Below are positions 1 through 64,000 of a DNA stretch of 64,000 nt, in pieces. The stretch comes from Podarcis muralis. Taxonomy: Eukaryota. Each line of letters starts with the position of its first letter. Position 1 is the first letter of the stretch. The notes beneath the pieces were generated by a model, which did not search any database, was not told the origin of the DNA, and saw only the letters and a program-made list of their open reading frames with translations. The DNA lies in contig NC_135670.1 in NCBI RefSeq assembly GCF_964188315.1, positions 1,178,001-1,242,000 on the forward strand. The letters run 5' to 3'. A program made the translations under genes and the position numbers.

Positions 1-55
1 ATTCTAGTAAGGTTTGCTATTCAGGGGTGGGGAGAAAGATTAACTGTCTTCCAAA

Positions 56-21080: not shown

Positions 21081-21240
21081 ACTGCATAAAAACCTCCTTT
21101 CTAGAAACCAAATAACCTGTTCCTACATCGGCAAGTCTCTGGCTTGAATGTCCACTCACTCAGAAGACTGAAGCCAGGGTGATACGATACAAAGTTTTAG
21201 CAATCAGACTGATGCAGTCCTGTGCACCTCAAGCCCCAGC

Positions 21241-21343
21241 TCTGAATGGTGCAGGTGATATTAAAAGCAACCCTCTGTCTTGCTTCGATGTTTTGCTACT
21301 GAACACTGGAACTCTCTGTAGAACTGGAGAAGTAATCATAGTT
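21241..21343 (-). promoter_or_regulatory. Putative conserved V2R promoter boxes upstream of gene 2
   Basis: AACTATGATTACTTCTCC at -263 and TGCACCATTCAGA at -173 from the ATG, matched in gene 3 at -271 and -172. Confidence 0.55.
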
Positions 21344-21639
21344 ATTGTCATAATCGCAAGAGAGATAATCACCTGCGCAGCATTGCAGCCTCTGAGACAA
21401 GGTGGAGGGGGGGGATGTTTATCACACTTCAGCAGCAGTTCCTATTTTATCCTCCTTAATAAGACATCAAAAGACTAACAGTAACAAAATAAAATAAAGA
21501 CCACAAGGACTTTGTGGTCTTCAAAAAGAAAAGAAAGAGGCTCTTAAACGATAGCCAGTTCGCAAGATAGTTTGTGCATTCCAAATTGGGCTAGGATTTC
21601 ATAATGCAAATGGAATTATCCATTGTTATACTATGAATT

Positions 21640-34200: not shown

Positions 34201-34487
34201 TCAGCTTCAGTGTGGCTTTCCTCGCCAGGAAGTTGCCTGACAGTTTTAATGAAGCCAAGTTTATCACCTTCAGTATGCTTCTGTTTTGCAGTGTTTGGTT
34301 GTCCTTTGTTCCCACCTACCTGAGTACTAAGGGGAAGTACATGGTGGCTGTGGAGATCTTTTCAATCTTGTCCTCCAGTGCAGGCTTACTGGTTTGTATC
34401 TTTTTCCCAAAAAGCTATATAATTATGGTAAGGCCTGAGTTGAACAACAGGGAGCAGCTAATACAGAGGAAAAAATCATCATTGTAA
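27318..34487 (+). CDS. V2R gene 3: vomeronasal type-2 receptor, 6 exons, ~874 aa, intact
   Basis: Exons 27318-27535, 28181-28472, 29573-30427, 31221-31442 (222 nt, 2 codons shorter than paralogs), 32364-32490, 33577-34487. 2625 nt open frame. Confidence 0.95.
29019..29376 (+). mobile_element. Sauria SINE, full length
   Basis: GGGACGCGGGTGG head, (ACCTTT)n tail, TSD TGCTACCATCAG at 29008-29019 and 29379-29390. Confidence 0.92.
30582..30798. mobile_element. Tigger-like MITE, one TIR degraded
   Basis: TA|CAGTGGTACCTC start. Reverse-complement relative of 59291-59508. Confidence 0.75.
31159..31211. repeat. (CT)n microsatellite abutting the gene 3 exon-4 acceptor
   Basis: Direct reading. Confidence 0.95.
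31543..31789 (+). mobile_element. tRNA-derived SINE family A
   Basis: Same head and tail as 18191-18444. Confidence 0.88.
32066..32140. repeat. (CTT)n microsatellite
   Basis: Direct reading. Confidence 0.95.
33186..33305 (+). mobile_element. L2 3' end fragment
   Basis: CTGAAGGCAGCCCTGTT...GGAAGCCGCCCAGAGTGGCTGGGG matches the 24.5-kb L2 terminus. Confidence 0.75.
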
Positions 34488-45200: not shown

Positions 45201-45382
45201 CCTACCTGAGCACCAAAGGGAAGTACATGGTGGCTGTGGAGATCTTCTCTATCTTAGCCTCCAGCTTGGGGCTACTGGGTTGCATCTTTCCCCCAAAATG
45301 TTACATCATTTTGATGAGACCAGAATTGAACAACAAAGAACAACTTATGAGGAAAAAAGTAAAGAATTTTAAGCCCAAATAG
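36280..45382 (+). CDS. V2R gene 4: vomeronasal type-2 receptor, 6 exons, ~897 aa if an upstream ATG is used (start uncertain)
   Basis: Exons 36280(or 36250/36253/36274)-36545, 37423-37714, 39235-40095, 41392-41619, 43414-43540, 44463-45382. Frame is open throughout. The position homologous to the paralog ATG is ATT (36328). Confidence 0.88.
36788..36990 (+). pseudogene. Dead V2R exon-1 copy in intron 1 of gene 4
   Basis: Frame from 36801 reads [45 protein letters not shown], aligning to gene 3 [47 protein letters not shown]->TGA stop at 36897. ATG 36788 is out of frame. Confidence 0.85.
37869..38112 (+). mobile_element. tRNA-derived SINE family A with deleted head
   Basis: GCCAGTGT joined directly to TTGCTTCCCCGCTCC (promoter region missing). 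(CCT)n(CTT)n tail. Confidence 0.8.
38300..38541 (+). mobile_element. Sauria SINE, 5'-truncated
   Basis: 3' two-thirds with (ACCTTT)n tail. TTTACTGCCAA repeated at both junctions. Confidence 0.85.
40328..40464. mobile_element. hAT MITE
   Basis: TIRs CAGGCATAGGCAAACT / AGTTTGCCTATGCCTG, 8-bp TSD TTTTAAGC. Confidence 0.92.
41003..41138. mobile_element. hAT MITE
   Basis: TIRs CAGGGTTTCCCAAACTTGGGTCTCCAGCTG and reverse complement, 8-bp TSD GGGTAAAT. Confidence 0.92.
41711..42578 (+). mobile_element. LTR-like segment within a GC-rich repeat
   Basis: TG...CA ends, AATAAA near 42446. No TSD found, so boundaries are approximate. Confidence 0.35.
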
Positions 45383-46477: not shown

Positions 46478-46883
46478 TATTCATGAATATAGTCAATAAG
46501 TTGTTCATTTTTCACACTCCCACCACACATGAAGGAAAGTGTCCTTGTGACTGCAAGCTCTCCAGTACAATGGTTGGGTGTCACACAGTAATGTTTTTGA
46601 AAATAATCAGCGTCTTGGTATTTTCTCACGCCAGTGTGGTGTAGTGGTTAAGAGCGGTGGACTCGTAATCTGGTGAACCGGCTTCACTTCCCCGCTCCTC
46701 CACATGCAGCTGCTGGGTGACCTTGGGCTAGTCACACTTCTCTGAAGTCTCTCAGCCTCACTCACCTCACAGAGTGTTTGTTGTGGGGGAGGAAGGGAAA
46801 GAAGAATGTTAGCTGCTTTGAGACTCCTTCGGGTAGTGATAAAGCAGGATATCAAATCCAAACTCCTCCTCCTCCTCCTCTTC
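46478..46883 (+). repeat. Inverted copy of gene 5 intron-3 segment (~150-nt unique flank + SINE family A)
   Basis: Reverse complement of ~50199-50600. First ~92 nt identical, shared diagnostic GCTTCACTTCCCC. Confidence 0.92.
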
Positions 46884-47168: not shown

Positions 47169-47608
47169 ACAGAGTTGAACTCTGGAAGTCTAATGATTAA
47201 GTGAGAATGTATCCAGCTAGCTCTGTCATGAGGTGTTGAGCATAGATCACATGAAAAAGGATACAATTACAGATCTGTTTTTATATGCAGTTTTGTTATT
47301 AGTTATAAATTTTCCTCAGTGATATAGGTTTTATATATATATATTGTACACCACTTAATAATCTCAATAAAGGTACAATAAACTCCACCCTACAAGTGTT
47401 TTGCTGTAAGGAAAATTTTGTGGCATGGTAAACATTTTAAATCGCCATTTCAACTCTTTCTTTCTTTGATGCATGTGAGGAGAGTAGATCAAAGGTTTCA
47501 GCAGGATAGCACAGAATCATGCTTTGTATAAAGCCACATATGAGTTTATCTGATATTTTAGAGGAAACAAAAATAGAAATTAAGGAAATAGGTTGAATAT
47601 TTGGAACG

Positions 47609-50600
47609 TTAATGTTTTCTCCGTATTAGCTGCTCCTTTTTGTTCAGATCAGGCCTAAAAACAATAATGTAGCATTTAGGAGCAAAGATACAGCTCAGTA
47701 AACCTGAGCCAGATGACAGGATGGAGAAGACCTCCACGGCCACCATGTATTTCCCCTTGGTGCTCAGGTAAGTTGGAACAAAGGACAGCCACACACTGCA
47801 GAAGACCAACATGCTGAAGGTGATGAACTTGGCTTCATTGAAACTGTCTGGCAGCTTCCTAGCAAGGAAAGCCACCGTGAAGCTGACAGTGGCTAGAAAG
47901 CCCATATAACCCAGGACACAGTAGAACATGGTGACTGACCCTTCATTACATTCAATTATGATTTCTCCATACACTGAGTGACTGTCCAAATCTGGGAATG
48001 GGGGAGAAAAACCCAGCCAAAGAGCACAAATGGCGACTTGAACGAGGGAGCAACACAATACGACAGAATGTGCCAATCTTTTCCCCACCCATTTCCGGAA
48101 AATGTTTCCTGGCTTGGAGGCCATGAAAGCCACAACCACTGTAATCGTCTTAGCCAAAACGGAAGAGACAGCAATCGAAAAGATGATGCCAAAAGCTGTT
48201 TGTCTGAGGAGGCAGGTGGTTTTCTTGGGTTGTCCGATGAATAGCAAAGCGCAGAGGAAGCAAAGGAGGAGAGAGGCCAGGAGAAGGTAGGTGAGGCTCC
48301 GATTGTTGGCTTTGACGATGGGAGTGTCCCGCTGCTTGATGAAGACTGCAAGCACCAGAGCTGTGATCAGGGCAAAGAGAAGAGCCAGAGAAGTCAAAGT
48401 AATGCCCAAAGTATCTTCAAAAGAAAGAAAACTTTGAATCTTGGGGAAGCAGTGATCTCTACGATTATTAGGGAAGTGATCTTCAGGGCATCTGGTACAG
48501 TAATCCAGGTCTGTAAGAGAAATATAATATGCATATGGTAAAGATGTCCATAATTGTTCTGTCTTATAAGAGTCACTTTTCTAAAAATCCACCTAAATCC
48601 AGTGTTTAAATCTTCTGGATCCAGCATTGTCCACCAGTGACCTTTATCCAGCACCGAAGTGAGAAAATAAATCTATTGAGTGAATGGACATCAAAATGGC
48701 AAATGAAATTCAGCATTAGCAAGTGTAAATTGCAGCAAAAATCCTAATTTCACATATTCATAAATTCAGTCGGATCTGGTGGTTATTGACTAGTAGTGAG
48801 ATCTTTAAATTATGGAGGATAGCTTGATGAAGAATTTAACCTTGAATGTGGCAGCTGTGTGTTAAGGAGTGTTAGGGAAATTATTGGATGGAAACCAGTT
48901 AGCGTCATTATATAAATCTATAGTGTGACCACTATTGGAATATTAATGTGGTGCTAGAAAAGTTTCTGAAAGGGCAAGTAAAATGATCAGAGGGTTGGAA
49001 CAACTCCTTTTTGAGGAATGTTGCAGTTGCAGCTTCTAACATCAAAGAAAAAAAGGCATGGGAAGGTGGACACTAGAGTGTTTGGACTATGCATGGTGTG
49101 AAGATTTGGAAGCCCACTGTTTTTACTTGTTAGGTTTCTTTGCTGGTAGTTATATTATTATTGTTGAGTTTTTGGGTTTGTGTGTGTAACTTTTTTATCA
49201 ATTTTTTGAAGGCAGAAATAAAAAAAATAAATTATTTAACTGAGTACAAAACATAAAGCATGGTCAAGGATTGTTAAAGATAAACACTCTACAGCTATGC
49301 AACCCATTGGAAGAATTGTACAGAGAAATAAATAAAATCTATCTTGTTGACAATTTCTAATTAATAATCAATGTTCTTGCATGCTCCAGGTTACTGTTTA
49401 CTCCCTCCCAAACTAGACGTTATTACTCTAACCACAAACAAGAATATTCTGCAACTGGCAGCAGCTAAATCTGAAGAATGGTGCTTGTTTACACATATAT
49501 GTTCTACTACTACCCATACTTTTCATGACAAACGTATTTCTTATAAATATTTCTCCTACCCTCCTGGTTCGAAATCATATCTTCTGGACATGGAGAACAG
49601 TCATAGCAACAAAATTTCTTTCCCTCCTTTTTTTTCCTGCTGTACCCCGGATAGCACTGATCATTACATAAAGAGAATGGAGGTACCTATTCTTGAACAA
49701 AGGAAGGATTGAGCATTAATTGTTTGGATTTCCTTTCTTTTCCAAATAATATCCAATAAACAAAGGGCTGATGAAATGAAGTATTAACATCTGTGATTGC
49801 GCAAATGGCAAGTTCAGTGTAAAGAATGCTGTACTAAGTCTTTAGGTGGGGGTGGGTCTACTCCACCACAATGAAGGAGGAAATCTAATGCCGCCTCAGC
49901 CACCCAGTTACTATGAAAGTTATCATAAAGTGAGAATTTTCCACACCTGAGACAATTCTCTGTGCCATTCAAGTCTCTCTTCGTTAATAGTGAGCACTTC
50001 ACCAGGGGGAGCCTGAGGATCCAGCCTTCCCACTTTGACTTTGACATAAGAGTTATTTGGGAAAGTGACCAAGCTGGTAATGTCAAATCCAGCTACTATT
50101 TCTCTGTTTTCATTAAACATAATTTCATCACCAGCACTGTTGTTGAATAGAATGTCTCTAAACAATGAATGACTCTGGATGGGGAGAGAAAAAGAACTGA
50201 GAAGAAGAAGATGGGTTTGGATTTGACACCCCGCTTTATCACTACCCTAAGAAGTCTCAAAGCGGCTAACATTCTCCTTTCCCTTCCTCCCCCACAAGAA
50301 ACACTCTGTGAGGTGAGTGAGGCTCAGAGACTTCAGAGAAGTGTGACTGGCCCAAGGTCACCCAGCAGCTGCATGTGGAGGAGCGGGGAAGTGAAGCTGG
50401 TTCACCAGATTACAAGTCCACCGCTCTTAACCACTACGCCACACTGGCGTTAGAAAATACCAAGACGTTGATTATTTTCAGAAACATTACTCTGGGACAC
50501 CCCGCCACTGTACTGGAGAGCTTGCAGTCACAAGGACACTTTCCTTCATGTGTGGTGGGAGTGTGAAAAATGAACAACTTATTGACTATATTCATGAATA

Positions 50601-53600
50601 TTTCTTCAATAACAAGCCAGTCTATAGCCCTGCACTTGGCTGTTAAAAGTGATGTAAATTTCACCCTTGTTTAGAAGGAGCTGCTAACTCTGCTGCTGGC
50701 TGCAGTCAAACTTGAAACTGGAAGTCTACATTGGGTTCCTTCCAGGAATGAATGGTGTCAGACATTAACCTATCATGGCAGGGTTTTGATGCTGTTTGGG
50801 CCTATGTTGTGCATAACTTTCATGATAAAAAGTGTTCTTTTTATCATACCACATTGTTCCACCATACAGTTATATGTATGCAACTATTTTTCAGTTAAAG
50901 GGTTATGGTAAGGGACAGCATCTCAAGTATGGTACCAAGTGTGAGGTGCAACATGTGAACCCATGTCACTTCACCAAAAGTGTCAAAATCTTCCATCACC
51001 CTCCACCAAATCTCCACTCTCCCTGAAAATAGATTTTTTTAAAATATAAAAACAAAACAAAAACCTACCCTAAATATTTATAGGGAGGATTGAAATTGAT
51101 GAGCGGGACCAAGGGTTTAGACACATGTTCTAAATGGATTTCAGAGGCATTACCTTCCAGGGTTCCACTTTCCAAGGATGCAGCTTGCCTCCATTTTCCA
51201 TATGTCTGTAATTTAATCTGTATGAACGCATGATCCGTAAAGCATGTGCCACAGCAAAGACAGCATTATAGATACTGTAGCTGTGACCTGTCATGCTTAA
51301 TTGAAAAAATTGCCCAGGAAGGCTCTCCAGCTTCTCCTCACCACTACATGCTCCATCAATATCTGTGAAGCCATCAGAACTTGGAACAAAGCAGTCAAAT
51401 GCTTGTTCCCAGAAATCTTTGATAAAACCATCTCCTTTGGCTTGAGTAGGTTTTAAAGTTTGAATATATTTTCGGAATCCTTGAACCTCATTTGAAGGAA
51501 TTGTGAAAGAAATAGCCCCATGGAACATTTGGATATCCCAGGTTTTTTGTAATATAAAGAGTGCAAAATCAATCTGGGCTGTTGTAATCCATACTTTCCC
51601 AAAAGATGCAGTCTCATTGTACTGAGACTCAGCTGCTAGAGACTTCTTTACCCCCAAGATAATGGCTGCCAACCATCTAATATTTGCAGTTTCTCCATAT
51701 AGAACAATCACATTGGCTTTGCTGTTCTTGAAAACTGGCACGCTCTTCATAATGTATTTGTTCATTTCACCCATTTCCAATATTCTCAAATAAATTGGAA
51801 CTTTATTTGTGAAGGCTGAACAGATTCCATTCTTGGAAAAGATTGCTTCCATGACCTGCAAGAAATGTTCTCCACCAGCATCATCAAAAGTCATCAGCCC
51901 AACCCATTTCCATCTAAAATGCACTAGTAGCTCAACAATTCCTTGGTACTGGAGGGCTTCATTGGGGACCATGCGGTAAAAGGAAGGGAAAGCTACTTGA
52001 TCATTCATTGCTGGTTGAAATGAGCCATATGAAAACTAGAACAAAGAAAGAAACAGATTTTAACTGTGATAGCATCCTGAAGAATGAGCCAGGTTGTATT
52101 TTCCCTCTGCCTCTTTTCAACAGCAGACTATTGGTCCAAAGAAGCAAGACAATATCCATCCCAACACCAGATCTAAAACCTGGACGATATCATTTAATTG
52201 GATCTGTTCCTGGAAGTCACAGTCCTCTGCCAAGAAATCGAGGCACAAACAGAAGTGTGAGTGAGCCCTTAGACTCCTTCCAGGAAAAGAAGAAGATTTT
52301 ATTATCCCCTATGAATGCAACACATTGATCCTACCTGTGGAATCTTGTAAAGTCCTAAAATATCTGCCATCTGTGAAGATGTATCAGATCTAAGGCCACC
52401 AATGATGCCCATTAGATGTGTCTGGGTGTCACATTTGTAGTTGGGGAAAAACTGATGGAATTTGAAAATAAGATCCAGTGTGGTGCGGTAGGTCATCCTT
52501 GCATCATAGTAGCTATCATAGATGTGGAACCCAAGAGTGACATTGGGCAAGATGTTGGAATTCTCGTTGATCTCATGCACAGCAAATGCCAAGGCCAGGA
52601 TGTGCTGGTAGAATTTTGGCACCATCCTGGAAACAGATTTACAAGCTCTTCTTAGGAGAAAAATCAACAGTACATTAAAATATGGTTCCACTCTGGTTTT
52701 AAGATAATTTAGCGGTCCAGTGAAAAGGAAAAGCTACAATTCCCAGAAGATGGTAGAGGTAAATACTTTTCGTTGGACAGAAAATGAAATTCACATTGGC
52801 TCACTTTTACTGGATTGCATTTCTTTATTATTTACTTTAATAGAACACTTACCTCTGAAGATCTTGAAGTGTTGTTTTTTTTAAATTACCCACTATTCCA
52901 CCATGTAGCCCAAAGCTTCCAAACAAAAACATGGCAAGCCAAAGGCTTACACCACCTAACAGACTTCTACAAAAATGGCAAACCCATACCGACACAAGAA
53001 ATACAAGACAAACTAGCAGACACCCAAATACCCTAGCTGACCCAGCAACAACTACACGACTTCTTAAATAATCCACCAATCATAGCAGCAGCCATTAGGC
53101 CTCTGGCAACCTTTGAAAAACTTTCCTGACAACAGAGGGACACAGCAAGGGGATGGTATCCACACTATACAAAAGACAACTCCAAGACCCTACAAAATCC
53201 CTCACCACAATTAAAGTCCAATGGGAACATGATATAGGTTACGAAATAAATCCTACTGAATGATCTAAACTGTGGTCTAAACCACCCTTTAAGTCCATCT
53301 CATCCAAAAGAAGGAAACTCACTTTGCAACTAATTCATAGATGGTACCTGACACCTCGAAAGCAGGTCCTGACACACCTAGGAACTTCACCTAAATGCAG
53401 GGGAGGTTGCACCTCTACAGGAACATACCTTCAAATGTGGTGGGATTACCACCCAATTCAATCCTTTTGGGCATCAGTCCTACAAGAAATATGCAAAATA
53501 ACAAAACAGGTACAGTGGTACTTCAGCCAATCACCCATTCCCACCACCCTTCTGAGTAATACCCCTCCCCACCCTCTCACCATATATAAGGGTCTGATGA

Positions 53601-55069
53601 CTTCTGTTTCAGTGTATCTGAAGAAGTGTGCATGCACATGAAAGCTCATACCAAGAACAAACTTAATTGGTCTCTAAGGTGCTACTGGACATTTTTTTTT
53701 ATTTTTTAAATTTATATATTTATACATTATCTTTGTAACCGAAGCAGTCATAAATAAACAACACATACTGAACAATATTAGAACTTACAAAGATTGGCTA
53801 CCAAGCATATACATATAAGACTACCTCCACATTCCTGAAGCTCTAATGGGTTTATTGCCCCACAGTCGCTGGACCATTTAATACATCTCTCCCATCTTTC
53901 ACCTGAGAAAGGGTCAGTTCAGAGCAGGCTGTCACCTGCGGGGGGTGGGGAGCTATAATACTACTTCCACCCACTCAATCCCAGCTCCTGATAAATAACC
54001 AATCAGCACTGGTAGTGACAGAGCTGGCTCAAGAGATTTTGGCATCTAGGCGAACCATAAAATTGCACATACACCCTCCCTGCCAGGGAAGAAGGGGCGA
54101 GTGAAGATCTGCACCAGGAACAAGTGGGGAATAAATATCTACATCAGGATCTTCTACCACTGTGGATCCTGCCATCTGAGGAAGTTACCTCACCTTGCCT
54201 CATGGGTGCGCCTGCCCTGGAAAGCTGACACAAACATCAGCCTCGCACTCAAGTGGTCCTGAAGGGCACTATAAACTCAAGTTGTTGCAGCCAATCAGCA
54301 GCTATGCTCTTCTTCTCCACCAGCAATTTCAGTAAAAGGAAGGGTTGGGGCAATTCAATGTATGTTTGCCCAGACAAAAACTGATAGAAGAAGTTAACAA
54401 AAGTTACAGACTGATTTTTAAAGCACTTCTTTAACTTCATATATTTACTGAGATATTTCCAGGTGGGGAAAAATGGAGATCTCTTAAAAAGCAGCACATT
54501 GTTCATCATTGACCTGTTTCGTATAAATTTTAAAAAGAGAGAGAAACAAGCCAATAAGAAAAAACAACAACATGCTGCTTCTTTGCTAAAATGGGAAGCC
54601 TCAGCAGGCAAGCCTATCGCCTCAGCTGAGTGAAATCATCTCAAAATATTTTAATGATTCAAATGGGTATTTAGAACAATGATATATCTAGTTAATGTCT
54701 TCTGGTCCTTAGGAACATTCACTCAGTCACAACAATTGATACTGTTCAATATAAACCAACCTTTGGTGATTCTAAAAGGATATAAACACCAAAATAAAAG
54801 CAAAGCTCACTTTTATGGTGTGTGGGAAAAATAATTTCTTACAGTTGGACACCAATCTCCTCCTCCAAAGGGTGTTTCAGGAAATCGATATCAGTTAAAA
54901 GGAAGTAGATATGAGACATTATTCCTCCAATGTGGATTTCACTTGACTGGTACCATTCATGCGGAATATGTACTGAATCATTCCCAGTGCAGTTGAAATT
55001 TTCTACTTTGCAAGCCGTATGTGGTAGCAACAGCAAGAACAACATCTCAAACCTCGTCCTGATGGCCAT
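47609..55069 (-). CDS. V2R gene 5: vomeronasal type-2 receptor (second sequence group, [11 protein letters not shown] type), 6 exons, ~885 aa, intact
   Basis: Exons (minus) 55069-54843, 52626-52335, 52035-51154, 50174-49947, 49686-49560, 48510-47609. 2658 nt open frame, canonical splice sites. Confidence 0.95.
50199..50448 (-). mobile_element. tRNA-derived SINE family A
   Basis: Same family. Tail ends ~24 nt upstream of the gene 5 exon-4 acceptor. Confidence 0.88.
52850..53510 (+). mobile_element. L1/Tx1-clade LINE ORF2 C-terminal fragment (degraded)
   Basis: LIHRWYLTP...C.GGC...GTY..MWW....I..FW..V...I, the Cys-rich C-terminus of L1-clade ORF2, with stops. Confidence 0.75.
53524..53690 (+). 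mobile_element. Retroelement terminus (Penelope-like, tentative)
   Basis: TCTGAAGAAGTGTGCATGCACATGAAAGCTCATACC...GGTCTCTAAGGTGCTACTGGA resembles a common reptile repeat terminus. Class assigned from memory. Confidence 0.45.
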
Positions 55070-56333
55070 AGGAAGCTCTGAACTGAGATTTCTTTCTGAT
55101 GCTCTAGGGTATAGTTATTATTGCTAGCTTGGATTGAACAAATTAGCTCTGCTGCTGGTCTCTTTTGAAAATACACTTTTAGGGACCTGTATCTCGTATC
55201 TACCTTGCATTTACCATCAAGAGGGTGAATGTCCCTTCACATCAATTGCAAGACAATAATCTGACTCTTGACCTGTTAGATCTCAAGCCTTGCCTCTCTC
55301 CAATCCCCTTACCTGTAGCTGGCAATTTTACAGTGGGGTAGTATAAAATCCTTCCAGGCATGCTTATTTTCTGCACCACCACCCCACTGAAAAGTCCCTG
55401 CAGAGTTGGCCAGCTGAATAAAATACAGTAATTTGGGTAATTACAGGGTGGCATCACTAGCTGCTGATTCAAACATGTTTGTGAGATTTCAAATCAAACT
55501 TCTTCAGCTCTCTAGTTGGTCTTCAGCTGAGTGGTGACTAGAAAGTGACCCACAGTGACCACAAGGATAGAACATGTCTGGATGCAGGGATATTAGATAT
55601 GTCAAAGTTACAGTTGAACTCCTGCTCTCCAATGGCATTAAGGCAAATAACAAAGCCCCCTTGGTGGTGTGTCATTTCCCACACACCCTGCCCTGTCCCT
55701 TGTCCTCAATTTCCACTGGTTATCACAAGATAATTCCTCATATCAAAATAATATGTATTTTGGAGTGATATATGATCACTGTACTCCTCTAGGCTTTTAT
55801 TAGTAGATTTTGTACTTATAAAAGTACATGGAATGTGAGCTATAAGCTATGAGCCAAGGGAGCTATGATTTTGAGAATGTATATGAGCACAAGTAACAAA
55901 CTAGCAACCATTGTATGCTTCACATGATACAAAATGGCTTCCAATAGAGGGCTGGCATGACATGAAATGGCTGTTGTGGCTCTAAAGCACAAGTGAAATT
56001 TTGTAGTTAAAGACTCACATATACATAAAAAATAGGAATGGGGAAATAAGGACACTATGGATTAGTCTGTTCAACATTTTACTTTCAAATTCTACAATTT
56101 ACTATACTTCACCAAGAAAACAGGAACAAAATTCAATACTGAGGAAGGCATTACTCAAAAAGGCATATGAAGGTTTCATTCTACTTAAATTTCAACGGCT
56201 GTTTGTTTTGTGTATGTGAGAAGAATGCTTCAGATATTTCAAAAGGGCGGTCCAAAATTAGACATTGCACAGGGAAGCTGACTTTCACAGAAAATAAATA
56301 AAAATGAAGAAAATGATCTGAATATTTGAAACG

Positions 56334-57277
56334 TTAATGTTTCTTCCTTATTAGCTGCTCCTTTTTGTTCAGATCAGGCCTAAAAACAATAATGTAGCAT
56401 TTAGGAGCAAAGATACAGCTCAGTAAACCTGAGCCAGATGACAGGATGGAGAAGACCTCCACGGCCACCATGTATTTCCCCTTGGTGCTCAGGTAAGTTG
56501 GAACAAAGGAGAGCCACACACTGCAGAAGACCAACATGCTGAAAGTGATGAACTTGGCTTCATTGAAACTGTCTGGCAGCTTCCTAGCAAGGAAAGCCAC
56601 CGTGAAGCTGACAGTGGCTAGAAAGCCCATATAACCCAGGACACAGTAGAACATGGTGACTGACCCTTCATTACATTCAATTATGATTTCTCCATACACT
56701 GAGTGACTGTCCAAATCTGGGAATGGGGGAGAAAAACCCAGCCAAAGAGCACAAACGGCGACTTGAATGAGGGAGCAACACAATACGACAGAATGTGCCA
56801 ATCTTTTCCCCACCCATTTCCGGAAAATGTTTCCTGGCTTGGAGGCCATGAAAGCCACAACCACTGTAATCGTCTTAGCCAAAACGGAAGAGACAGCAAT
56901 CGAAAAGATGATGCCAAAAGCTGTTTGTCTGAGGAGGCAGGTGATTTTCTTGGGTTGTCCGATGAATAGCAAAGCGCAGAGGAAGCAAAGGAGGAGAGAG
57001 GCCAGGAGAAGGTAGGTGAGGCTCCGATTGTTGGCTTTGACGATGGGAGTGTCCCGCTGCTTGATGAAGACTGCCAGCACCAGAGCTGTGATCAGGGCAA
57101 AGAGAAGAGCCAGAGAAGTCAAAGTAATGCCCAAAGTATCTTCAAAAGAAAGAAAACTTTGAATCTTGGGGATGCAGTGATCTCTACGATGATTAGGGAA
57201 GTGATCTTCGGGGCATCTGGTACAGTAATCCAAATCTGGAAGAAAAAGATATGTATATATATATGTATATATGTATA

Positions 57278-57324
<47 letters not shown>

Positions 57325-60300
57325 GATAACATCAGTAATCAGAACCAAGTTTCTATGAGTCCACCTAAATCGGTATTTGCAGTCTTGGTAATTGTTTCCA
57401 GGGATTAATTCTAATTCATTCTGCATAAGAAACATGTGGTTTGTCAGGGTTCTTTAACCCTACTGAGTAAAGAAAGACTTGTGGTGTGGCAGGCTATTTG
57501 GAGATAGGGAAAATGGGTTGATTTCAATTGAGATTTCCCGAGCCTTCTCTTCCCTTTTACAGTATATAACATACAGTATATATATAGACATATAACTATT
57601 ACTATTCCCCATCTTTGTCAGTGCTTTAGGCAGCGTCAAAAGCTCACTAGACCCCTTGCCTGGCTATTTTGCATTAATTCAGCCAAAGTGATCCAGCTTT
57701 CTATTGTGGAGATCTATGATTTTCTCCCTTCCCCCTTCTTTTTGGTAGAGTTCCAAGATTTCAACGAATGATCAATTGTTTCAAACATGATTAAAGGGTC
57801 ATACAATATGCTGTTGGGTTTTTTTGCCGAAGCAACTTCTCCATCTCCTTCCCATCCATAAAAACACTATTGAAAATAATCTGCAGGCTAAATCTCATGC
57901 ATCCACCTCCAAAAACTGTCTATACTTTTCATTAGAAATATTTAAACATGTCTCCTACCTTCCTGTGTTGAGATCATTTCCTCTGGGCATGGATAGCAGT
58001 CGTAGCAACAAAATTTCATCCCCTCCTTCTTTTTTCTGCTGTACCCAGGATAGCATTTATCATTGCATAAGGAGAATGGAGGCACCTATACATTGATGAA
58101 GGAATAATTTTCCATGGAATTAATTGTTTTCATTTTACAAAGAAGGGTTGATTAATTTTAAACATTAACATATGTCAGTGTTTCCCAACCTTGGGCCTCC
58201 AGCTGTTTTTGGACTACAACTCCCATCATCCCTAGCTAGCAAGACCAGTGGTCAGGGATGATGGGAATTGTAGTTCAAAAACAGCTGGAGGCCCAAGGTT
58301 GGGAAACACTGACATATGTGACTACAGAGACAGTGCAGAGAGTGTGGGCAATGCTTACTATTGGAATAAGAGGAAAACATCATAAAGAAATCTCTGTCCA
58401 TGGCAAACCCTGTACTATATTTTTTTCAATAACTAGAAAGTACCAAAAGGGGGGGGGGATTAGAAATAGCAAGATAAGATGGGCTAAAATATCTACAGTC
58501 TCTTAGTGACCAGCACCAATCTTCTGCAGTGGCTTCCTGTTTGCTACAAAGCCAGGTTCAAAATCTACGTCTAGGGACTTCCTGAACAAATATATCCCAG
58601 CTCAGAGTCTTTCAGAAGTCCTGGTTCTCAGCTTGATAACACAGTAAGAATAGGTAATTAAAAAGGAGGATTTATTGCAAAAACAAACAGATAGCTCCAG
58701 ATGGCTCTAACAAAGCCTCTGGCATCATTACTCAAGATGACCCTTCTGAAGATTCCTTCCTATGATGACAGAAGATATTGAACTCATGAACCTTACGTCT
58801 CTTGTTTTGCTTCCTGTCTAACAGCCCATCCCTTCACCGATTCTCCACACTTATTGGATTAGCTCCAGCCTCTTCCTTTTCTGACAGGCTACCCATGTCT
58901 CTATTCGCTCCTGTTTGAATTTCCTGAGAGCTTTGGCTGCGCTCCAATGCTCAGAGGAGTCAAATTTGAGCCTCTCTGTTCTGCCACAGGCTCTAACGTT
59001 CCACTAGGAGCTGGCTCATTCCTGGCAGTGTCACTGGTTGTCCCCCACATTGATTCAGTTGACACTGACAAGAAATTGAGTGCCATTGGCCCAGCCTTGT
59101 AGAACACTCTTCCAATGGAGATTCAGAATGCAGCTTCTATATTGACCTTTAAATGCATACTGAAAACTTTAATCGGACGCTTTCTGTAATGGTTTATGAT
59201 CTGATGATGGTGATGGCATGATGGTTCTTATTCTGCATATATAATTCTGCATATATAAACTTCAGTTCCTTTCAATGAAATTGAGGTGTACAGTGGTACC
59301 TTGGGTTAAGAACTTAATTCGTTCTGGAGGTCTGTTCTTAACCTGAAACTGTTCTTAACCTGAGGTACCACTTTAGCTAATGGGACCTCCTGTTGCCACC
59401 AGAGCACGATTTCTGTTCTCATCCTGAAGCAAAGTTCTTAACCCAAGGTACTATTTCTGGGTTAGTGGAGTCTGCAACCTGAAGCGTCTGTAGCCCGAGG
59501 TACCACTGTACAAGCATTTTAATAAATAATTAAAGAGTTTTCACAATGATTTTTTTCCTTAGGGTGGCATTTCTCTAGTAATGATATCACTCATTATATA
59601 TCTGTGTGTGCGCTTGTGTATAATTGTAGGCTGCCTTTTTCTATTAAAGAAAAAAACCAGCAAGGTGATGGACAGCATACAAAATTACTCTAAGTTCAAA
59701 AACAAACCAACAAATTACCACCCTTATTCAAGATACATTGTTATTTATTAATTGGAATAATGTGCTAATATTATGCCAAGCCAATGAATGTCATTGATTG
59801 TATGAAACAAAATTTGTATCCATTTATTTTAAATGGATGCCAGCCCATGGATGGATATCAATGGTATCATACGAGATGCTCTGCCAATGCTCTGCACCTG
59901 AGACAAGTCTCTGTGCCACTCAAGTTTCTCCTCGCTGATGGTGAGTGCTTTGTCCGGAGCAGCCTGAGGATCCAGCCTTCCCACTTTGATTCTAGCATAG
60001 GAATTGTTAGGGAAGGTGACTATGTTTGTAACATCAAATCCAGCTACAAATTCCCCATGTTCATTGAACATAATTTCGTCTCCAACAGTGTTGTTGAGTG
60101 GGTTGTTCCTAAGCAATGAATGGAGCTACACGAGGAGAGAAATAGAACAGAGAGCCCCATAAGAGGCAGAATATTCTCAGCAAGATATACATAAACCATT
60201 TCCAGCTCATGCTAAGCATATCTGCTCAGAAATATATCCTAGTAAAGTAAAGGTAAAGGGACTCCTGACCATTAGGTCCTGTTGCGGACGATTCTGGGGT

Positions 60301-63300
60301 TGCGGCACTCATCTCGCTTTATTGGCCGAGGGAGCCGGCGTACAGCTTCTGGGTCATGTGGCCAGCATGACTAAGCCGCTTCTGGCGAACCAGAGCAGCA
60401 CACGGAAACGCCGTTTACCTTCCCGCTGGAGCGGTACCTATTTATCTACTTGCACTTTGACGTGCTTTTGAACTGCTAGGTGGGCAGGAGCAGGGACTGA
60501 GCAACCGGAGCTCACCCCGTCGTGGGGATTCGAACCGCCGACCTTCTGATCGGCAAGTCCTAGGCTCTGTGGTTTAACCCACAGCGCCACCCACGTAAAA
60601 TAATTAACCTAGTAAATTAATTGGGGCTAATTCAATTTCCTTAGGTAAGAACAAAGTAATACACAATAGTTGGGGTTTTTCCCGGTCTGAGAGCTGTGTC
60701 ATTTTGTGGGAACACCTTCCTGGGGGTACGTTGCCAGTGGCAGGAAGGCTAGGAGGCAAAAGTGGGCATACGCAAAGCAGTTTACAAAAAGATGAGACAA
60801 GGAAATCAAGGAAAAATTACTGCCCAACTTTAAAACACATATCTGCTCAGAAATATATCCTAGTAAAGTAAAGGTAAAGGGACTCCTGACCATTAGGTCC
60901 TGTTGCGGATGACTCTGGGGTGGCGGCACTCATCTCACTTTATTGGCCAAGGGAGCCGGCATACAGCTTCCGGGTCATGTGGCCAGCATGACTAAGCCGC
61001 TTCTGGCGAACCAGAGCAGCACATGGAAACGCCGTTTACCTTCCCGCCGGAGTGGTACCTATTTATCTACTTGCATTCTGACTGCTTTCGAACTGCAGTT
61101 TAGTATTTTAACACTAAAGTTAAAATACTGAAACTTTAAAACACACTAAAGTTAAAATAAGGGACGCGGGTGGTGCTGTGGGTAAAAGCCTCAGCGCCTA
61201 GGGCTTGCCAATCAAAAGGTCGGCGGTTCGAATCCCTGCGGCAGGGTGCGCTCCCGATGTTCGGTCCCAGCGCCTGCCAACCTAGCAGTTCGAAAGCACC
61301 CTTAAAGTGCAAGTAGATAAATAGGGACCGCTTACTAGCGGGAAGGTAAACGGCGTTTCCGTGTGCGGCTCTGGCTCGCCAGAGCAGCGATGTCACGCTG
61401 GCCACGTGACCCGGAAGTGTCTCTGGACAGCGCTGGCCCCCGGCCTCTTGAGTGAGATGGGCGCACAGCCCTAGAGTCTGTCAAGACTGGCCCGTACGGG
61501 CAGGGGTACCTTTACCTTTACCTTTAAAGTTAAAATACTGAAACAGATTCAAATTACCTTAACTTTCTAAGCAACTGAGCAGGTTTGTCTAAACTAGGCA
61601 TGTCCAAAGTCCGTTTCGGGGGCCTAATCCAGCCCGCCAGCCAGTTTAATCTAGCCCCTCTGGCAGATTATTTCCTGGGGTAAAATCCTAAAAAAAAACC
61701 CTTAACAACTTCAATCCTAAAAGAAGCTTGACAACTCCAACCCCCCAAAAAGGTCAGCAACTTTGGTTGGCCCTTTGGTTGGCCCCCACGGCCCTTTACT
61801 TCATCAAATCTGGCCCTCTTTGGAAAAAGTTTGGACACCACTGGTCTAAACAATATATGGAAACTACAGAAAGGAAATTGATGTGATGAGTCTGACTAGC
61901 TGCTTGGACCTATTTTTTGAAGAGAGCTCAAAACGAAATCCATGCATACTATTCTGTGTGCCACTATAATGCTCTAGCCCAAGTCATAGATGTTTATGAG
62001 TGAGGAGTCATTTACCTGCCAGGGCTCCACTTGCCAAGAATGCAGCTTGCCTCTACTTTCAATGTTTCTGTGGTTGGAGCTAGCTGAGTATTTGACACGT
62101 AAGGCATGGACTACAGCATAAACAGCATTATAGATACTATAGCTATGGCCTGTCATCTTCAACTGAAAAAATTGTGCAGGAAGGTTCTCCAGCTTCTCCT
62201 CACCAGTACACGCTCCATCAATATCTATAGAGCCATCAGAATTTGGAACAAAGCAGTCAAATGCTTGCTCCCAGAAATCTTTGATAAAGCCATCCCCTTT
62301 CGGTTGGGTAGGACTCATACTCTGAACAAATGTTTGGAAACCTGGAATGTCTTTTGAAGGAATTGTGAAGGAGATGGCTCCGTGGAACACCTGGATATCC
62401 CAGTTTCTTTGGAATAGAAATAGTGCTAAATCAATCTGGGCTGTCGTAATCCATACTTTCCCCAAAGGTGCCTTTGCATTGTAGTAAAGATTACCAGCAA
62501 GAGACTCTTTGATCCCAAAGATAATGGCAGCCAACCACCTGAGGTTTGACGTTTTCCCATATATAACGATTGCATTGGCTTTGCTGTCCCTAAAAATAGG
62601 AATACTTTCCAATATGTATTTGTTCATATCGCCCATTTCCAATATACGGATATTAGCTGGAACTTTGTTGGTGAAGGCTGAGCAGATGCCATTCTCGGAA
62701 AGCATGGCTTCTATAGTCTGCAGGAAATGCTGTCCCCCATCATCATCAAAACTCATCAAACCAATCCATTTCCATTTGAAATGCAGAAGCAACTGGACAA
62801 TTCCTTGGTACTGTAGAGATTCATTGGGAACCATGCGGTAAAAGGAGGGGAACCCAATGTGATCATTCACTGCTGGATGAAATGAGCCATAAGAAAACTA
62901 AAATATAAAAAAAGTAATAGACAGGTAGTTATCTGAAGACTCTGTAAGGAATCATTGCTGTCCAACACTTATCATTTCATGGTTTTATTCTTGCAATAAA
63001 ATTCTAGATGCATATTTTTTATTATTTCCAAGGCCAGAGTCAGTAGTTGGAATTGCACCCAGAAACAAATATGGATGCAATGTTCCATTCTACGTAGTGT
63101 GCACCTCTAAACAAACATCAGACTGGTGTCCAGCCTGTGAGTTCTGTATATTTCTTCAATAGCAGTCCCAAACAGATTTTATTGCAATAATCTACTCAGG
63201 AAATTATGAAAGCATGAAGGAGAGTGGCAAGCAGCCAAGAGAGCTAGAGAGTTCTTGGGGGGGGGGGGTGGAATACCACCTGGGCATTCAGAATCAGACT

Positions 63301-64000
63301 TCTTGCCATGTTACCTCCAAGGTGAGGCAGGCAGGCTAATCTAATAAGACTGTCCTCCAGCTCCATGATCAGTTTAACTACCCTACCACCTTCCCCATCT
63401 TCCATGATTTCATGTATTTATTGACCTCAATCCATCCTCTTACTCACAACACACATTTTCTGAGGGCATCTGTAGGAGAGTTTTGTTATTAGTGATTGTT
63501 GTTTACGGATTGTGCTTCTGATAGATTCTGGTTTACTTGTTGGCATCCATCTTCCTTGAGAGACAAGGAGTTGAAGCCAAACCACTGTGTTAGCAACACC
63601 AAAGTGACCTCCCCAGGGTGCAAGCCTGGGCAGTGTATATGGAGGGCCTGGGCTGCCTAGATGACAAGTCCCCCCTCTTGGCCATGCTGTTGTGGTCCAA
63701 AGGAAAGCAGAGCAAGATGTTTTTGTTTGTTTATTTGTTTGTTTTGAATATGGGCTACCTTCCCAGGTTGACAATCCCCATCTGCCCCTTTATTTACTAG
63801 TTTTATTATAAACCATTGCACGGCCTGTGCAAAAAATGGAATATAAATCTAAAAATAAAATATTCATCATTTTGAAAATACTTCCCCATGAACTCCTCAC
63901 CTGTGGAATCTTGTAACGTCCCAAGACATCTGCCATCTGTGAGGAGGTATCAGACCGAAGTCCACCAATGACTCCCATTAGGTGTGTTCTGCTGCCACAT
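56334..64000 (-). CDS. V2R gene 6: vomeronasal type-2 receptor, close paralog of gene 5, 5' end beyond window
   Basis: Exons (minus) >64000-63901 (partial exon 2), 62897-62016, 60125-59898, 58085-57959, 57235-56334. Frames open, canonical splice sites. Confidence 0.93.
57252..57322. repeat. Compound (TA)n/(TG)n microsatellite near the gene 6 exon-6 acceptor
   Basis: Direct reading. Confidence 0.95.
58176..58311. mobile_element. hAT MITE
   Basis: TIRs CAGTGTTTCCCAACCTTGGGCCTCCAGCTG and reverse complement, 8-bp TSD ACATATGT. Confidence 0.92.
59291..59508. mobile_element. Tigger-like MITE
   Basis: TA|CAGTGGTACCT...AGGTACCACTG|TA. Confidence 0.88.
60243..60597 (-). mobile_element. Sauria SINE, near full length
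   Basis: Tail TAAAGTAAAGGTAAAGGG at left, head ...CACAGCGCCACCCACGT at right. Imperfect TSD ..CCTAGTAAA. Confidence 0.9.
60838..61096 (-). repeat. Copy of 60217-60476 (26-nt flank + SINE 3' part)
   Basis: Shares the flank CATATCTGCTCAGAAATATATCCTAG and diagnostic GGGACTCCTGACC / GGTCCTGTTGCGGA. Confidence 0.9.
61161..61525 (+). mobile_element. Sauria SINE, different subfamily
   Basis: GGGACGCGGGTGG head, (ACCTTT)n tail, TSD TAAAGTTAAAATA. Confidence 0.9.
61595..61843. mobile_element. hAT MITE
   Basis: Imperfect TIRs (TAGGCATGTCCAAA / TTTGGACACCACTG), 8-bp TSD GTCTAAAC. Confidence 0.85.
63535..63690 (+). mobile_element. Interspersed repeat fragment related to 45715-45835
   Basis: Shared GTTGGCATCCATCT..GAGAGACAA..AAACCACTG.GTTAGCA. 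Confidence 0.45.

What the first reader, a model, noticed from the sequence alone, without database searches (positions are those of the whole stretch)
47609..57235. Exon-restricted gene conversion homogenises the 7TM exon of genes 5 and 6 while ligand-binding exons diverge
Seen (by-eye counts): exon 6 differs at 14 of 902 nt (6 aa), mostly near the ends. Exon 5, ~1 kb away, differs at 21 of 127 nt, about 14 of them synonymous. Exon 3 differs at ~84 of 285 aa. Similarity collapses right at the intron boundary and ~20 nt into the 3' UTR. Purifying selection cannot suppress synonymous change, so exon 6 was recently overwritten. Inference: a modular 'constant 7TM / variable VFT' mode of evolution maintained by concerted evolution. 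The 3' bias and exon-bounded tract are compatible with cDNA-mediated conversion, or with DNA conversion limited by intron divergence.
Basis: partly seen in the sequence, partly recalled or inferred. Interest (0 to 1): 0.8.

Follow-up and report, generated by a model that had tools for sequence, protein, structure and literature searches.

The report
Scent-receptor pair keeps sharing one exon
Two neighbouring pheromone-receptor genes of the wall lizard, which duplicated long ago, keep copying their membrane-spanning last exon onto each other while their odour-binding exons drift apart; the same is seen in three other lizard species, making it a clean new example of a known process, gene conversion.

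Summary
In this Podarcis muralis V2R cluster, genes 5 and 6 differ at 14 of 902 nt in exon 6 (dS 0.034). They differ at 17-22% in exons 3-5 (dS 0.65-2.2), and their introns do not align.

Orthologous loci from P. raffonei, Lacerta agilis and Zootoca vivipara settle the interpretation.
- Exon 6 groups by species (26 sites by species against 1 by gene; the by-gene tree is rejected, AU p=6e-5).
- Exons 3, 4 and 5 group by gene (136:2, 40:1 and 16:1).

So the 7TM exon of this pair has evolved in concert since before the Lacertini radiation, with conversions after each species split.

Tract ends vary by lineage but stay between 16 nt upstream of exon 6 and about 23 nt into the 3'UTR. In Lacerta the tract crosses the splice acceptor, which points to a genomic DNA template, not cDNA. 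Changes fixed in both paralogues are GC-biased (19:4).

The pattern is not general. Genes 1-4 of the window and the Rhineura relatives show no such tract.

This is a new, well-documented member of a known kind: region-restricted concerted evolution, as in clustered protocadherins. Other first-reader notes on this genome (s1-152772, s1-188963) describe similar tracts. I did not check them.

The parts
47609..48510 (-). Gene 5 exon 6 (end of the Cys-rich linker, 7TM domain, stop codon); one copy of the homogenised exon
   Evidence: Pfam 7tm_3, E=6e-88. Splice acceptor and stop codon placed. It differs from gene 6 exon 6 at 14/902 nt.
56334..57235 (-). Gene 6 exon 6; the other copy of the homogenised exon
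   Evidence: Pfam 7tm_3, E=2e-87. Coordinates.
47586..48507 (-). Widest extent of the conversion domain in gene 5 in Podarcis (exon position 4 to 3'UTR +23). The near-identical core in P. muralis is 47624-48447 (exon positions 64-887, 6 differences in 824 nt).
   Evidence: Four-way and multi-species site patterns. Sites group by gene at exon positions 2-3 and in the intron, by species at positions 74-887, and by gene again from UTR +24.
56311..57232 (-). The same conversion domain in gene 6 (core 56349-57172)
57249..57323 (-). (TA)n/(CA)n microsatellite in intron 5 of gene 6. It ends about 14-17 nt upstream of exon 6 and is a large heterology that bounds the 5' edge of the homology island. All four gene-6 orthologues carry it.
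   Evidence: Tandem Repeats Finder. Alignment of intron ends in four species.
49560..49686 (-). Gene 5 exon 5 (NCD3G), about 1 kb from exon 6 and not homogenised
   Evidence: 21/127 differences. Pfam NCD3G. Quartet sites: 16 by gene, 1 by species.
57959..58085 (-). Gene 6 exon 5, not homogenised
49947..50174 (-). Gene 5 exon 4, not homogenised
   Evidence: 51/228 differences. Quartet sites: 40 by gene, 1 by species.
59898..60125 (-). Gene 6 exon 4, not homogenised
51154..52035 (-). Gene 5 exon 3 (main part of the Venus-flytrap ligand-binding domain), diverged
   Evidence: Pfam ANF_receptor. 177/882 nt and 85/294 aa differ, dS 0.65. The tree groups by gene.
62016..62897 (-). Gene 6 exon 3, diverged
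   Evidence: Pfam ANF_receptor.
52335..52626 (-). Gene 5 exon 2
   Evidence: 17/100 differences from the part of gene 6 exon 2 that lies in the window.
54843..55045 (-). Gene 5 exon 1 (start codon, signal peptide). With it gene 5 is a complete 877-aa ORF.
   Evidence: tblastx against the Rhineura loci, then ORF assembly.
63901..64000 (-). Gene 6 exon 2, cut by the window end. The rest of the gene lies in L006, which is the same assembly.

Best explanation
Genes 5 and 6 are old tandem paralogues of one V2R subfamily. They repeatedly exchange a stretch of about 0.9 kb by interlocus (non-allelic) gene conversion templated on genomic DNA.

The exchange is confined to a homology island made of exon 6 plus at most ~16 nt of intron 5 and ~23 nt of 3'UTR. 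Everything around that island has diverged beyond what strand invasion and heteroduplex extension tolerate. Upstream, gene 6 carries a microsatellite that gene 5 lacks. Downstream, identity falls to ~62% with indels.

Each conversion resets identity and so makes the next one more likely, which makes the island self-maintaining. Exon 6 therefore evolves in concert within each species, while exons 1-5 (signal peptide, Venus-flytrap and Cys-rich domains) diverge independently.

Shown here: the by-species against by-gene pattern, tract ends that vary between lineages, inclusion of intron sequence in one lineage, and a GC-biased substitution spectrum.

Inferred: the molecular pathway (double-strand-break repair by synthesis-dependent strand annealing or similar), the reading of the tract limits as homology limits, and the assumption that no selection for a shared 7TM is needed.
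For: 1. Within P. muralis, exon 6 dS is 0.034 against 0.65-2.2 in exons 3-5. Four-fold sites differ at 2.9% against 41%. Introns do not align.
2. The window is P. muralis OZ076970.1, since L006 is 100% identical to it. Syntenic loci were obtained for P. raffonei (L005), L. agilis (L007, L009) and Z. vivipara (L008).
3. The exon 6 ML tree groups (La5,La6) at 100%, (Zv5,Zv6) at 99% and (Pr5,Pr6) at 92%. The exon 3 tree splits into a gene-5 clade and a gene-6 clade, each at 100%.
4. Quartet sites for P. muralis and L. agilis, by species to by gene: exon 6 26:1, exon 3 2:136, exon 4 1:40, exon 5 1:16. Fisher p=7e-27.
5. AU tests reject the by-gene topology on exon 6 (p=6e-5) and the by-species topology on exon 3 (p=4e-76).
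6. Exon 6 dS between paralogues within a species is 0.024-0.064. Between orthologues of P. muralis and L. agilis it is 0.123.
7. Even the close pair P. muralis and P. raffonei has 5 by-species and 0 by-gene sites in the exon core. The last 30 nt of the intron have 10 by-gene sites and the UTR beyond +24 has 12.
8. In La5, the last ~13 nt of intron 5 and exon position 2 carry four clustered La6 states. The 3'UTR of Pr5 is of gene-6 type up to about +23 and then of gene-5 type.
9. Changes fixed in both paralogues are W>S 19 to S>W 4, against 36:26 in exon 3 (p=0.043). GC3 is 0.55 in exon 6 and 0.37-0.45 in exon 3.
10. Control: the Rhineura paralogues of the same subfamily have exon 6 dS of 0.49-0.66, at or above their exon 3 dS of 0.38-0.45. 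Exon 6 therefore has no intrinsically low synonymous rate.
Against: - Phasing of the 14 differences rests on the assemblies and on weak k-mer support.
- The GC-bias test is only marginal (p=0.043) and uses an outgroup that is itself subject to conversion.
- Donor and direction are resolved only at tract edges, where they point from gene 6 to gene 5 in Lacerta and probably in P. raffonei.
- Exon position 3 stays by-gene in all species although La5 carries gene-6 states on both sides of the acceptor. At least one tract is therefore patchy.
- Nothing tested here separates neutral self-maintenance from selection for a shared 7TM.
Confidence: 0.9

Rival explanations
1. cDNA-mediated conversion: a spliced V2R transcript is reverse-transcribed and used as the repair template, so the tract ends at the exon 5/6 junction because a cDNA has no intron.
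For: In P. muralis and P. raffonei the 5' end of the tract lies within exon positions 4-25, very near the acceptor. The tract covers the 3'-terminal exon.
Against: - In L. agilis the gene-5 copy carries four clustered gene-6 states in the last ~13 nt of intron 5, sequence that a spliced cDNA lacks.
- Identity ends ~23 nt after the stop codon in all species instead of running through the 3'UTR. No AATAAA or ATTAAA lies within 700 nt downstream in gene 5, and the first one in gene 6 is at +533.
- Exon 5 is not converted and intron 5 is retained.
- A microsatellite heterology ending about 14-17 nt upstream of exon 6 explains the 5' limit without invoking cDNA.
Confidence: 0.04
2. A single conversion event in the common ancestor, followed by ordinary divergence.
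For: One event would explain the low exon 6 divergence seen inside any single genome.
Against: After a single ancestral event, exon 6 should group by gene among descendant species. It groups by species instead: 26:1, 30:1 and 5:2 informative sites in three quartets, and AU p=6e-5. Tract ends also differ between lineages.
Confidence: 0.02
3. No exchange at all: extreme purifying selection on the nucleotide sequence of exon 6, for example an embedded regulatory element or codon-usage constraint, keeps the copies alike.
For: The 7TM exon is the most conserved part of V2R proteins. Across genes 1-4, exon 6 four-fold divergence is 0.6-0.8 times that of exon 3.
Against: - Orthologous exon 6 sequences diverge normally: dS 0.12 between Podarcis and Lacerta, and 0.5-0.7 to Rhineura.
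- The same new substitutions appear in both paralogues of one species.
- Rhineura paralogues show no dS deficit in exon 6.
Confidence: 0.01
4. Assembly artefact: the two exon 6 copies were collapsed or cross-polished.
For: No read-level check was possible. Near-identical 0.9-kb repeats are the kind of sequence where polishing can homogenise copies.
Against: - The same pattern, each time with species-specific shared substitutions, is present in four independent assemblies of four species.
- Cross-polishing can only act on copies that are already similar enough to cross-map. It cannot turn ~20% divergence into 1.5%.
- 31-mers of gene 6 exon 6 are held at 0.6-0.83 in contigs of many independent individuals and of sister species, similar to the 0.6-0.91 for the wider gene 5 region.
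Confidence: 0.01
5. The mechanism is the same gene conversion, but natural selection retains the homogeneity: the two receptors need an identical 7TM/signalling module, so converted haplotypes are favoured and divergent ones are purged.
For: - The state has persisted since before the Lacertini crown, with both genes intact in Podarcis and Lacerta.
- Exon 6 is under purifying selection (dN/dS about 0.2).
- In Zootoca, where gene 5 is broken, the paralogues are the most diverged (5.1% over 395 nt).
Against: A self-reinforcing homology island predicts the same persistence without selection. Rhineura keeps several members of the subfamily with diverged 7TM exons. No functional data exist.
Confidence: 0.2

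Closest known systems
Region-restricted gene conversion in clustered protocadherin variable exons (Noonan et al. 2004, cited in PMC2764143; fugu clusters PMC1852091)
   Same: - Tandem paralogues of a neuronal receptor family.
- Conversion homogenises the membrane-proximal and cytoplasmic part and spares the specificity-determining ectodomains.
- It is diagnosed by a large ratio of dS between regions. PMC2764143 reports 2-8 for the anole and 38 to over 1000 for teleosts. Here the ratio is about 19-26.
- Phylogenies must therefore avoid the converted region.
   Different: In protocadherins the converted and unconverted regions lie within one large exon and involve many paralogues. Here the tract coincides with a separate terminal exon, involves one gene pair, and is documented by orthologous flanks in four species.
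GENECONV-detected conversion among OlfC/V2R-like genes in catfish (PMC6588630), and the untested suggestion for squamate V2Rs (Brykczynska et al. 2013, PMC3590772)
   Same: Same receptor superfamily. Concerted evolution is invoked to explain paralogues that look species-specific.
   Different: As far as I read them, those studies report statistical tracts on coding alignments, without exon-level localisation, orthologous flanks or a cross-species by-gene against by-species test. Brykczynska et al. explicitly left the question open.
Exon-restricted concerted evolution in CEACAM paired receptors (PMC2832619, PMC7042247)
   Same: Gene conversion keeps one exon or domain alike between paralogues while other domains differ. 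Escape from conversion is also described (abstracts only).
   Different: The polarity is reversed. In CEACAMs the ligand-binding N domain is homogenised and the signalling tails differ. Here the signalling/7TM module is homogenised and the ligand-binding domain differs.
Primate L/M opsin genes (from my own knowledge, not checked here)
   Same: Tandem GPCR paralogues in which conversion homogenises most exons and introns, while a few spectrally important sites stay distinct.
   Different: In opsins the conversion is broad and selection protects small patches. Here the conversion is narrow and bounded by loss of homology.

Membership tests
V2R (class C GPCR, vomeronasal type 2 receptor) | 7tm_3 transmembrane domain encoded by a single large terminal exon | tested here: met
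   PF00003, E=6e-88 and 2e-87, full-length match 1-251/251.
V2R (class C GPCR, vomeronasal type 2 receptor) | Venus-flytrap (ANF_receptor) ligand-binding domain and NCD3G Cys-rich linker, in a six-exon gene | tested here: met
   PF01094 on exon 3 and PF07562 on exon 5. Six exons with AG/GT splice sites and an 877-aa ORF for gene 5. The nearest database proteins are named 'vomeronasal type-2 receptor 26-like'.
Concerted evolution by interlocus gene conversion | Within the tract, paralogues of one species are closer to each other than to their orthologues | tested here: met
   Exon 6 tree groups by species at 92-100%. dS is 0.024-0.064 between paralogues and 0.123 between orthologues. AU rejects the by-gene topology, p=6e-5.
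Concerted evolution by interlocus gene conversion | Sequence on both sides of the tract follows orthology, so the tract is bounded and is neither a crossover nor a recent duplication | tested here: met
   The intron 5 end, the 3'UTR beyond +24 and exons 3-5 all group by gene.
Concerted evolution by interlocus gene conversion | Homogenisation affects synonymous sites as much as non-synonymous ones | tested here: met
   Four-fold sites differ at 4/140 against 33/80. Codons with the same amino acid but a synonymous difference: 2.0% against 28-38%.
Concerted evolution by interlocus gene conversion | GC-biased substitution spectrum in the converted tract | tested here: inconclusive
   W>S 19 to S>W 4 against 36:26 in exon 3, Fisher p=0.043. 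GC3 is 0.55 against 0.37-0.45. The sample is small and the outgroup is itself converted.
Concerted evolution by interlocus gene conversion | Conversion events or polymorphisms shared between paralogues observed directly in populations or pedigrees | not testable with these tools
The only hint is that the masked gene-6-type protein P0127 carries gene 5's derived Ile at residue 160 of the exon 6 product.
cDNA (retrotranscript)-mediated gene conversion | The tract contains only mature-mRNA sequence and never intron sequence | tested here: not met
   La5 carries four clustered La6 states within the last ~13 nt of intron 5.
cDNA (retrotranscript)-mediated gene conversion | The tract runs along the mRNA (through the 3'UTR, or across exon junctions with intron loss) | tested here: not met
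   Identity ends ~23 nt after the stop codon. Exon 5 is unconverted and intron 5 is retained. The true poly(A) site is unknown.
Protocadherin-type region-restricted conversion | Large ratio between the highest and lowest regional dS among paralogues, with the specificity domain spared | tested here: met
   dS of exon 3 over exon 6 is 19, and of exon 4 over exon 6 is 26. The criterion and reference values come from PMC2764143.

The most novel reading that the evidence does not exclude
Conversion restricted to exon 6 may be common in squamate V2R repertoires and not a peculiarity of this pair. If so, two things follow.
(a) Many 'species-specific expansions' inferred from 7TM-only V2R trees would partly be artefacts of concerted evolution.
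(b) Selection may exploit it to keep a shared signalling or wiring module under receptors with different ligand-binding domains.

My data neither show nor exclude this. One of the two subfamilies in the window shows the pattern and four Rhineura relatives do not. Several unchecked first-reader notes on this genome describe similar 3'-half or 7TM tracts.
Probability: 0.2. Interest if true: 0.65.

Novelty: new member of a known kind. Interest (0 to 1): 0.45.

Why it matters
1. This is an unusually clean natural example of how loss of flanking homology confines gene conversion to an island the size of one exon. Four species provide replicate outcomes with different tract ends.

2. It answers, for one gene pair, a question that Brykczynska et al. 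2013 left open: whether conversion homogenises squamate V2Rs. It also gives a practical warning. V2R phylogenies and repertoire counts are often built on the 7TM exon. For this pair that exon reports species, not gene identity, so exon 3 should be used for orthology.

3. It provides two receptors with about 29% different ligand-binding exon 3 products and an almost identical 7TM. That is a ready-made pair for testing how modular V2R ligand recognition and signalling are.

4. The pair could serve to estimate interlocus conversion rates and GC bias in a reptile from population resequencing.

Tried and rejected
I could use only the shares of 31-mers held in public runs, which is weak evidence.
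- Sawyer-type permutation within single exons: it also flags cross-species pairs such as g4-RhE, so it is confounded by rate variation among sites. I did not use it for genes 1-4 or for Rhineura. For g5/g6 it shows only that the differences cluster at the exon ends (p=0.027).
- Dating the duplication against Rhineura: in exon 3, g5 and g6 are not sisters, but support is weak (50-78%) and AU does not reject their monophyly (p=0.145). I claim only that the duplication is old: dS is 0.65 between g5 and g6, against 0.44-0.50 between g5 and the Rhineura genes.
- Donor and direction of the core tract: polarising the 14 differences with outgroups gave no clear donor.
- First protein search with exon 6 alone: it missed the lacertid orthologues because of the tool's length filter. 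The best hit was Rhineura at 88%. I recovered the orthologues through P0003, P0125 and the cluster listing.
- Exact-product look-ups for P0124 and P0127 returned nothing.
- Literature: six searches found no report of concerted evolution restricted to the 7TM exon in V2Rs. The library does not hold most subscription journals.
- The 400-nt inverted repeat that encloses exons 4-6 of gene 5 does not match the tract limits, so I did not link it to the conversion.
Full report
**What the window is.** The window holds six V2R genes (tblastn map). Genes 5 and 6 lie head to tail on the minus strand and belong to one subfamily. Genes 1-4 belong to another, with about 40% amino-acid identity to gene 5 in exon 3 and about 70% in exon 6.

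Pfam confirms 7tm_3 on exon 6, ANF_receptor on exon 3 and NCD3G on exon 5.

The window is Podarcis muralis. Locus L006 (OZ076970.1), fetched through a P. muralis protein, is 100% identical to the window over 17,667 nt. An earlier scan note (s1-152553) had already called this genome a wall lizard.

**The observation.** I rebuilt both gene models with canonical splice sites. Gene 5 is a complete six-exon, 877-aa ORF.

- exon 6: 14/902 nt, 6 aa
- exon 5: 21/127 nt
- exon 4: 51/228 nt
- exon 3: 177/882 nt, 85/294 aa

dS is 0.65, 0.88 and 2.2 in exons 3, 4 and 5, and 0.034-0.039 in exon 6. Four-fold sites differ at 4/140 against 33/80. The depletion of differences in exon 6 has Fisher p=2e-47, and no permutation out of 10,000 reaches the observed fragment.

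Only the exons align between the two genes. Introns and flanks keep at most 62-76% remnants next to exons.

The 14 differences cluster at the ends of the exon. The core, exon positions 64-887, has 6 differences in 824 nt.

**Is a low synonymous rate a property of exon 6?** It is not. I fetched four Rhineura floridana loci holding five genes of the same subfamily. Their paralogue pairs have exon 6 dS of 0.49-0.66, at or above their exon 3 dS of 0.38-0.45. Exon 6 of g5 and g6 lies at dS 0.53-0.71 from the Rhineura genes, on a long shared stem.

In exon 3, g5 is closer to the Rhineura genes (dS 0.44-0.50) than to g6 (0.65). The duplication is therefore old, roughly as old as the split from the Rhineura lineage. 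The branching order itself is not resolved (AU p=0.145).

**The decisive test: orthologues.** Through P0003, P0125 and their 90% clusters I obtained syntenic loci from three more species:
- P. raffonei (L005)
- Lacerta agilis (L007, L009)
- Zootoca vivipara (L008)

Each has a gene-6 orthologue followed by a gene-5 orthologue.

The exon 3 tree splits cleanly by gene, with both clades at 100%, and every 5-against-6 comparison is 19-21% diverged in every species.

The exon 6 tree splits by species: (La5,La6) 100%, (Zv5,Zv6) 99%, (Pr5,Pr6) 92%, all Podarcis 87%.

Informative quartet sites for P. muralis and L. agilis:

| Exon | By species | By gene |
|---|---|---|
| 6 | 26 | 1 |
| 3 | 2 | 136 |
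| 4 | 1 | 40 |
| 5 | 1 | 16 |

AU tests reject the by-gene tree on exon 6 (p=6e-5) and the by-species tree on exon 3 (p=4e-76).

Exon 6 dS between paralogues within a species is 0.034 (P. muralis), 0.024 (P. raffonei) and 0.064 (L. agilis). Between orthologues of Podarcis and Lacerta it is 0.123.

Even between the two Podarcis species the exon core has 5 by-species and 0 by-gene sites, while the adjacent intron end and the UTR beyond +24 have 10 and 12 by-gene sites and none by species.

The copies were therefore already homogeneous at each speciation, and new substitutions have since been shared between paralogues in each lineage. That is ongoing concerted evolution, not a single event.

[quoted passage not shown] The process has run for at least that long.

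**Tract limits and mechanism.** Intron 5 is gene-specific in all species. Every gene-6 orthologue has a (TA)n/(CA)n microsatellite ending about 14-17 nt before exon 6 (57249-57323 in the window), which gene 5 lacks.

In Podarcis and Zootoca the 5' limit lies between exon positions 3 and about 25. In Lacerta, the last ~13 nt of the gene-5 intron plus exon position 2 carry four clustered gene-6 states, so one tract crossed the splice acceptor.

At the 3' end, the UTR of Pr5 is of gene-6 type to about +23 and then of gene-5 type. In P. muralis gene 5 differs from position 888 onward. From +24 all species group by gene.

Tract ends that vary, that always stay inside the short stretch where the two loci can still pair, and that in one case lie inside the intron fit conversion from genomic DNA limited by heterology. 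They do not fit a spliced cDNA template.

Changes fixed in both paralogues are GC-biased, 19 W>S to 4 S>W against 36:26 in exon 3 (p=0.043). Exon 6 GC3 is 0.55 against 0.37-0.45. This is what biased gene conversion predicts, but the evidence is only suggestive.

**How general is it?** It has not been shown to be general. Among genes 1-4 no pair has a recent tract. Their exon 6 four-fold divergence is 0.32-0.38 against 0.41-0.57 in exon 3. That could reflect old exchanges or merely base composition.

In Rhineura the tendency is reversed, with exon 3 more alike than exon 6. Other first-reader notes on this genome mention similar tracts (s1-152772, s1-188963). I did not test them.

However, the pattern recurs in four independent assemblies, each time with its own species-specific shared substitutions. 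An assembly artefact cannot explain that. The k-mer shares in many individuals are unremarkable.

**What is known.** Conversion restricted to a region or exon is well known, for example in clustered protocadherins (PMC2764143) and CEACAM paired receptors. Conversion among OlfC genes has been reported from GENECONV (PMC6588630). For squamate V2Rs it was raised as an open possibility (PMC3590772).

I found no report of concerted evolution restricted to the 7TM exon in V2Rs, within the limits of the searchable library.

**Verdict.** This is a new member of a known kind, and its interest is moderate.

Noticed in passing
window 46478-46877 and 50201-50600: A 400-nt inverted repeat, 94% complementary, encloses exons 4-6 of gene 5. 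It consists of a SINE-like element (other copies at 18196-18444, 31543-31756 and 37880-38033) plus about 150 nt shared only by the two arms. Both arms are also present in P. raffonei (L005 12641-13023 and 16349-16734). It is the subject of note s1-184838. Its limits do not match the conversion tract.
   Followed up: partly
L008 (Zootoca vivipara) 14864-21485: The Zootoca gene-5 orthologue looks like a pseudogene. Exon 2 is hit in two frames, exons 4-5 were not found, and exon 6 reads through only about 133 codons before stop codons appear. Its remaining exon 6 part is the most diverged from its paralogue (5.1% over 395 nt), as expected if conversion or constraint has lapsed.
   Followed up: partly
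L005 (P. raffonei) 1-4573: In the P. raffonei gene-6 orthologue, at least 4.5 kb upstream of about -530 from exon 6 has no similarity to the P. muralis window. This points to a large lineage-specific insertion or rearrangement in intron 5. The annotated 833-aa gene still spans it.
   Followed up: no
window, exon 6 of genes 1-4 (10780-11679, 14123-15019, 33576-34475, 44462-45358): All six genes have a higher GC3 in exon 6 (0.54-0.56) than in exon 3 (0.37-0.47). Genes 1-4 show 0.6-0.8 times the four-fold divergence in exon 6 relative to exon 3. This could be a trace of older 7TM exchanges or simply a composition effect.
   Followed up: partly
L001-L003 (Rhineura floridana), exon 3 of RhA-RhD: The Rhineura paralogues show the opposite tendency. 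Exon 3 is more alike at four-fold sites (17-22%) than exon 6 (28-32%), and long similar fragments cover exon 3 positions about 139-577 between RhB/RhC/RhD. This may be conversion in the ligand-binding exon there, though the test used is confounded by rate variation among sites.
   Followed up: partly
proteins P0124 and P0127 compared with window 47612-48508 and 56337-57233: Older protein models of this gene pair differ from the window in the exon 6 product exactly where the window copies carry singleton changes. P0124 is P. muralis XP_028566569.1. P0127 is of gene-6 type with its name masked. P0124 (gene 5) has Ile21, Ile97 and Val160, matching the other copies (Pr5, g6, Pr6) where window g5 has derived singletons. 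P0127 (gene 6) has gene 5's derived Ile160. If both are P. muralis, this is a polymorphism shared between the paralogues.
   Followed up: partly
database hits: This V2R subfamily appears to have only two members in the Lacertini species sampled. Its nearest relatives elsewhere are at least five genes in the amphisbaenian Rhineura (77% identity over the full length). Other squamates reach at most about 68%.
   Followed up: no
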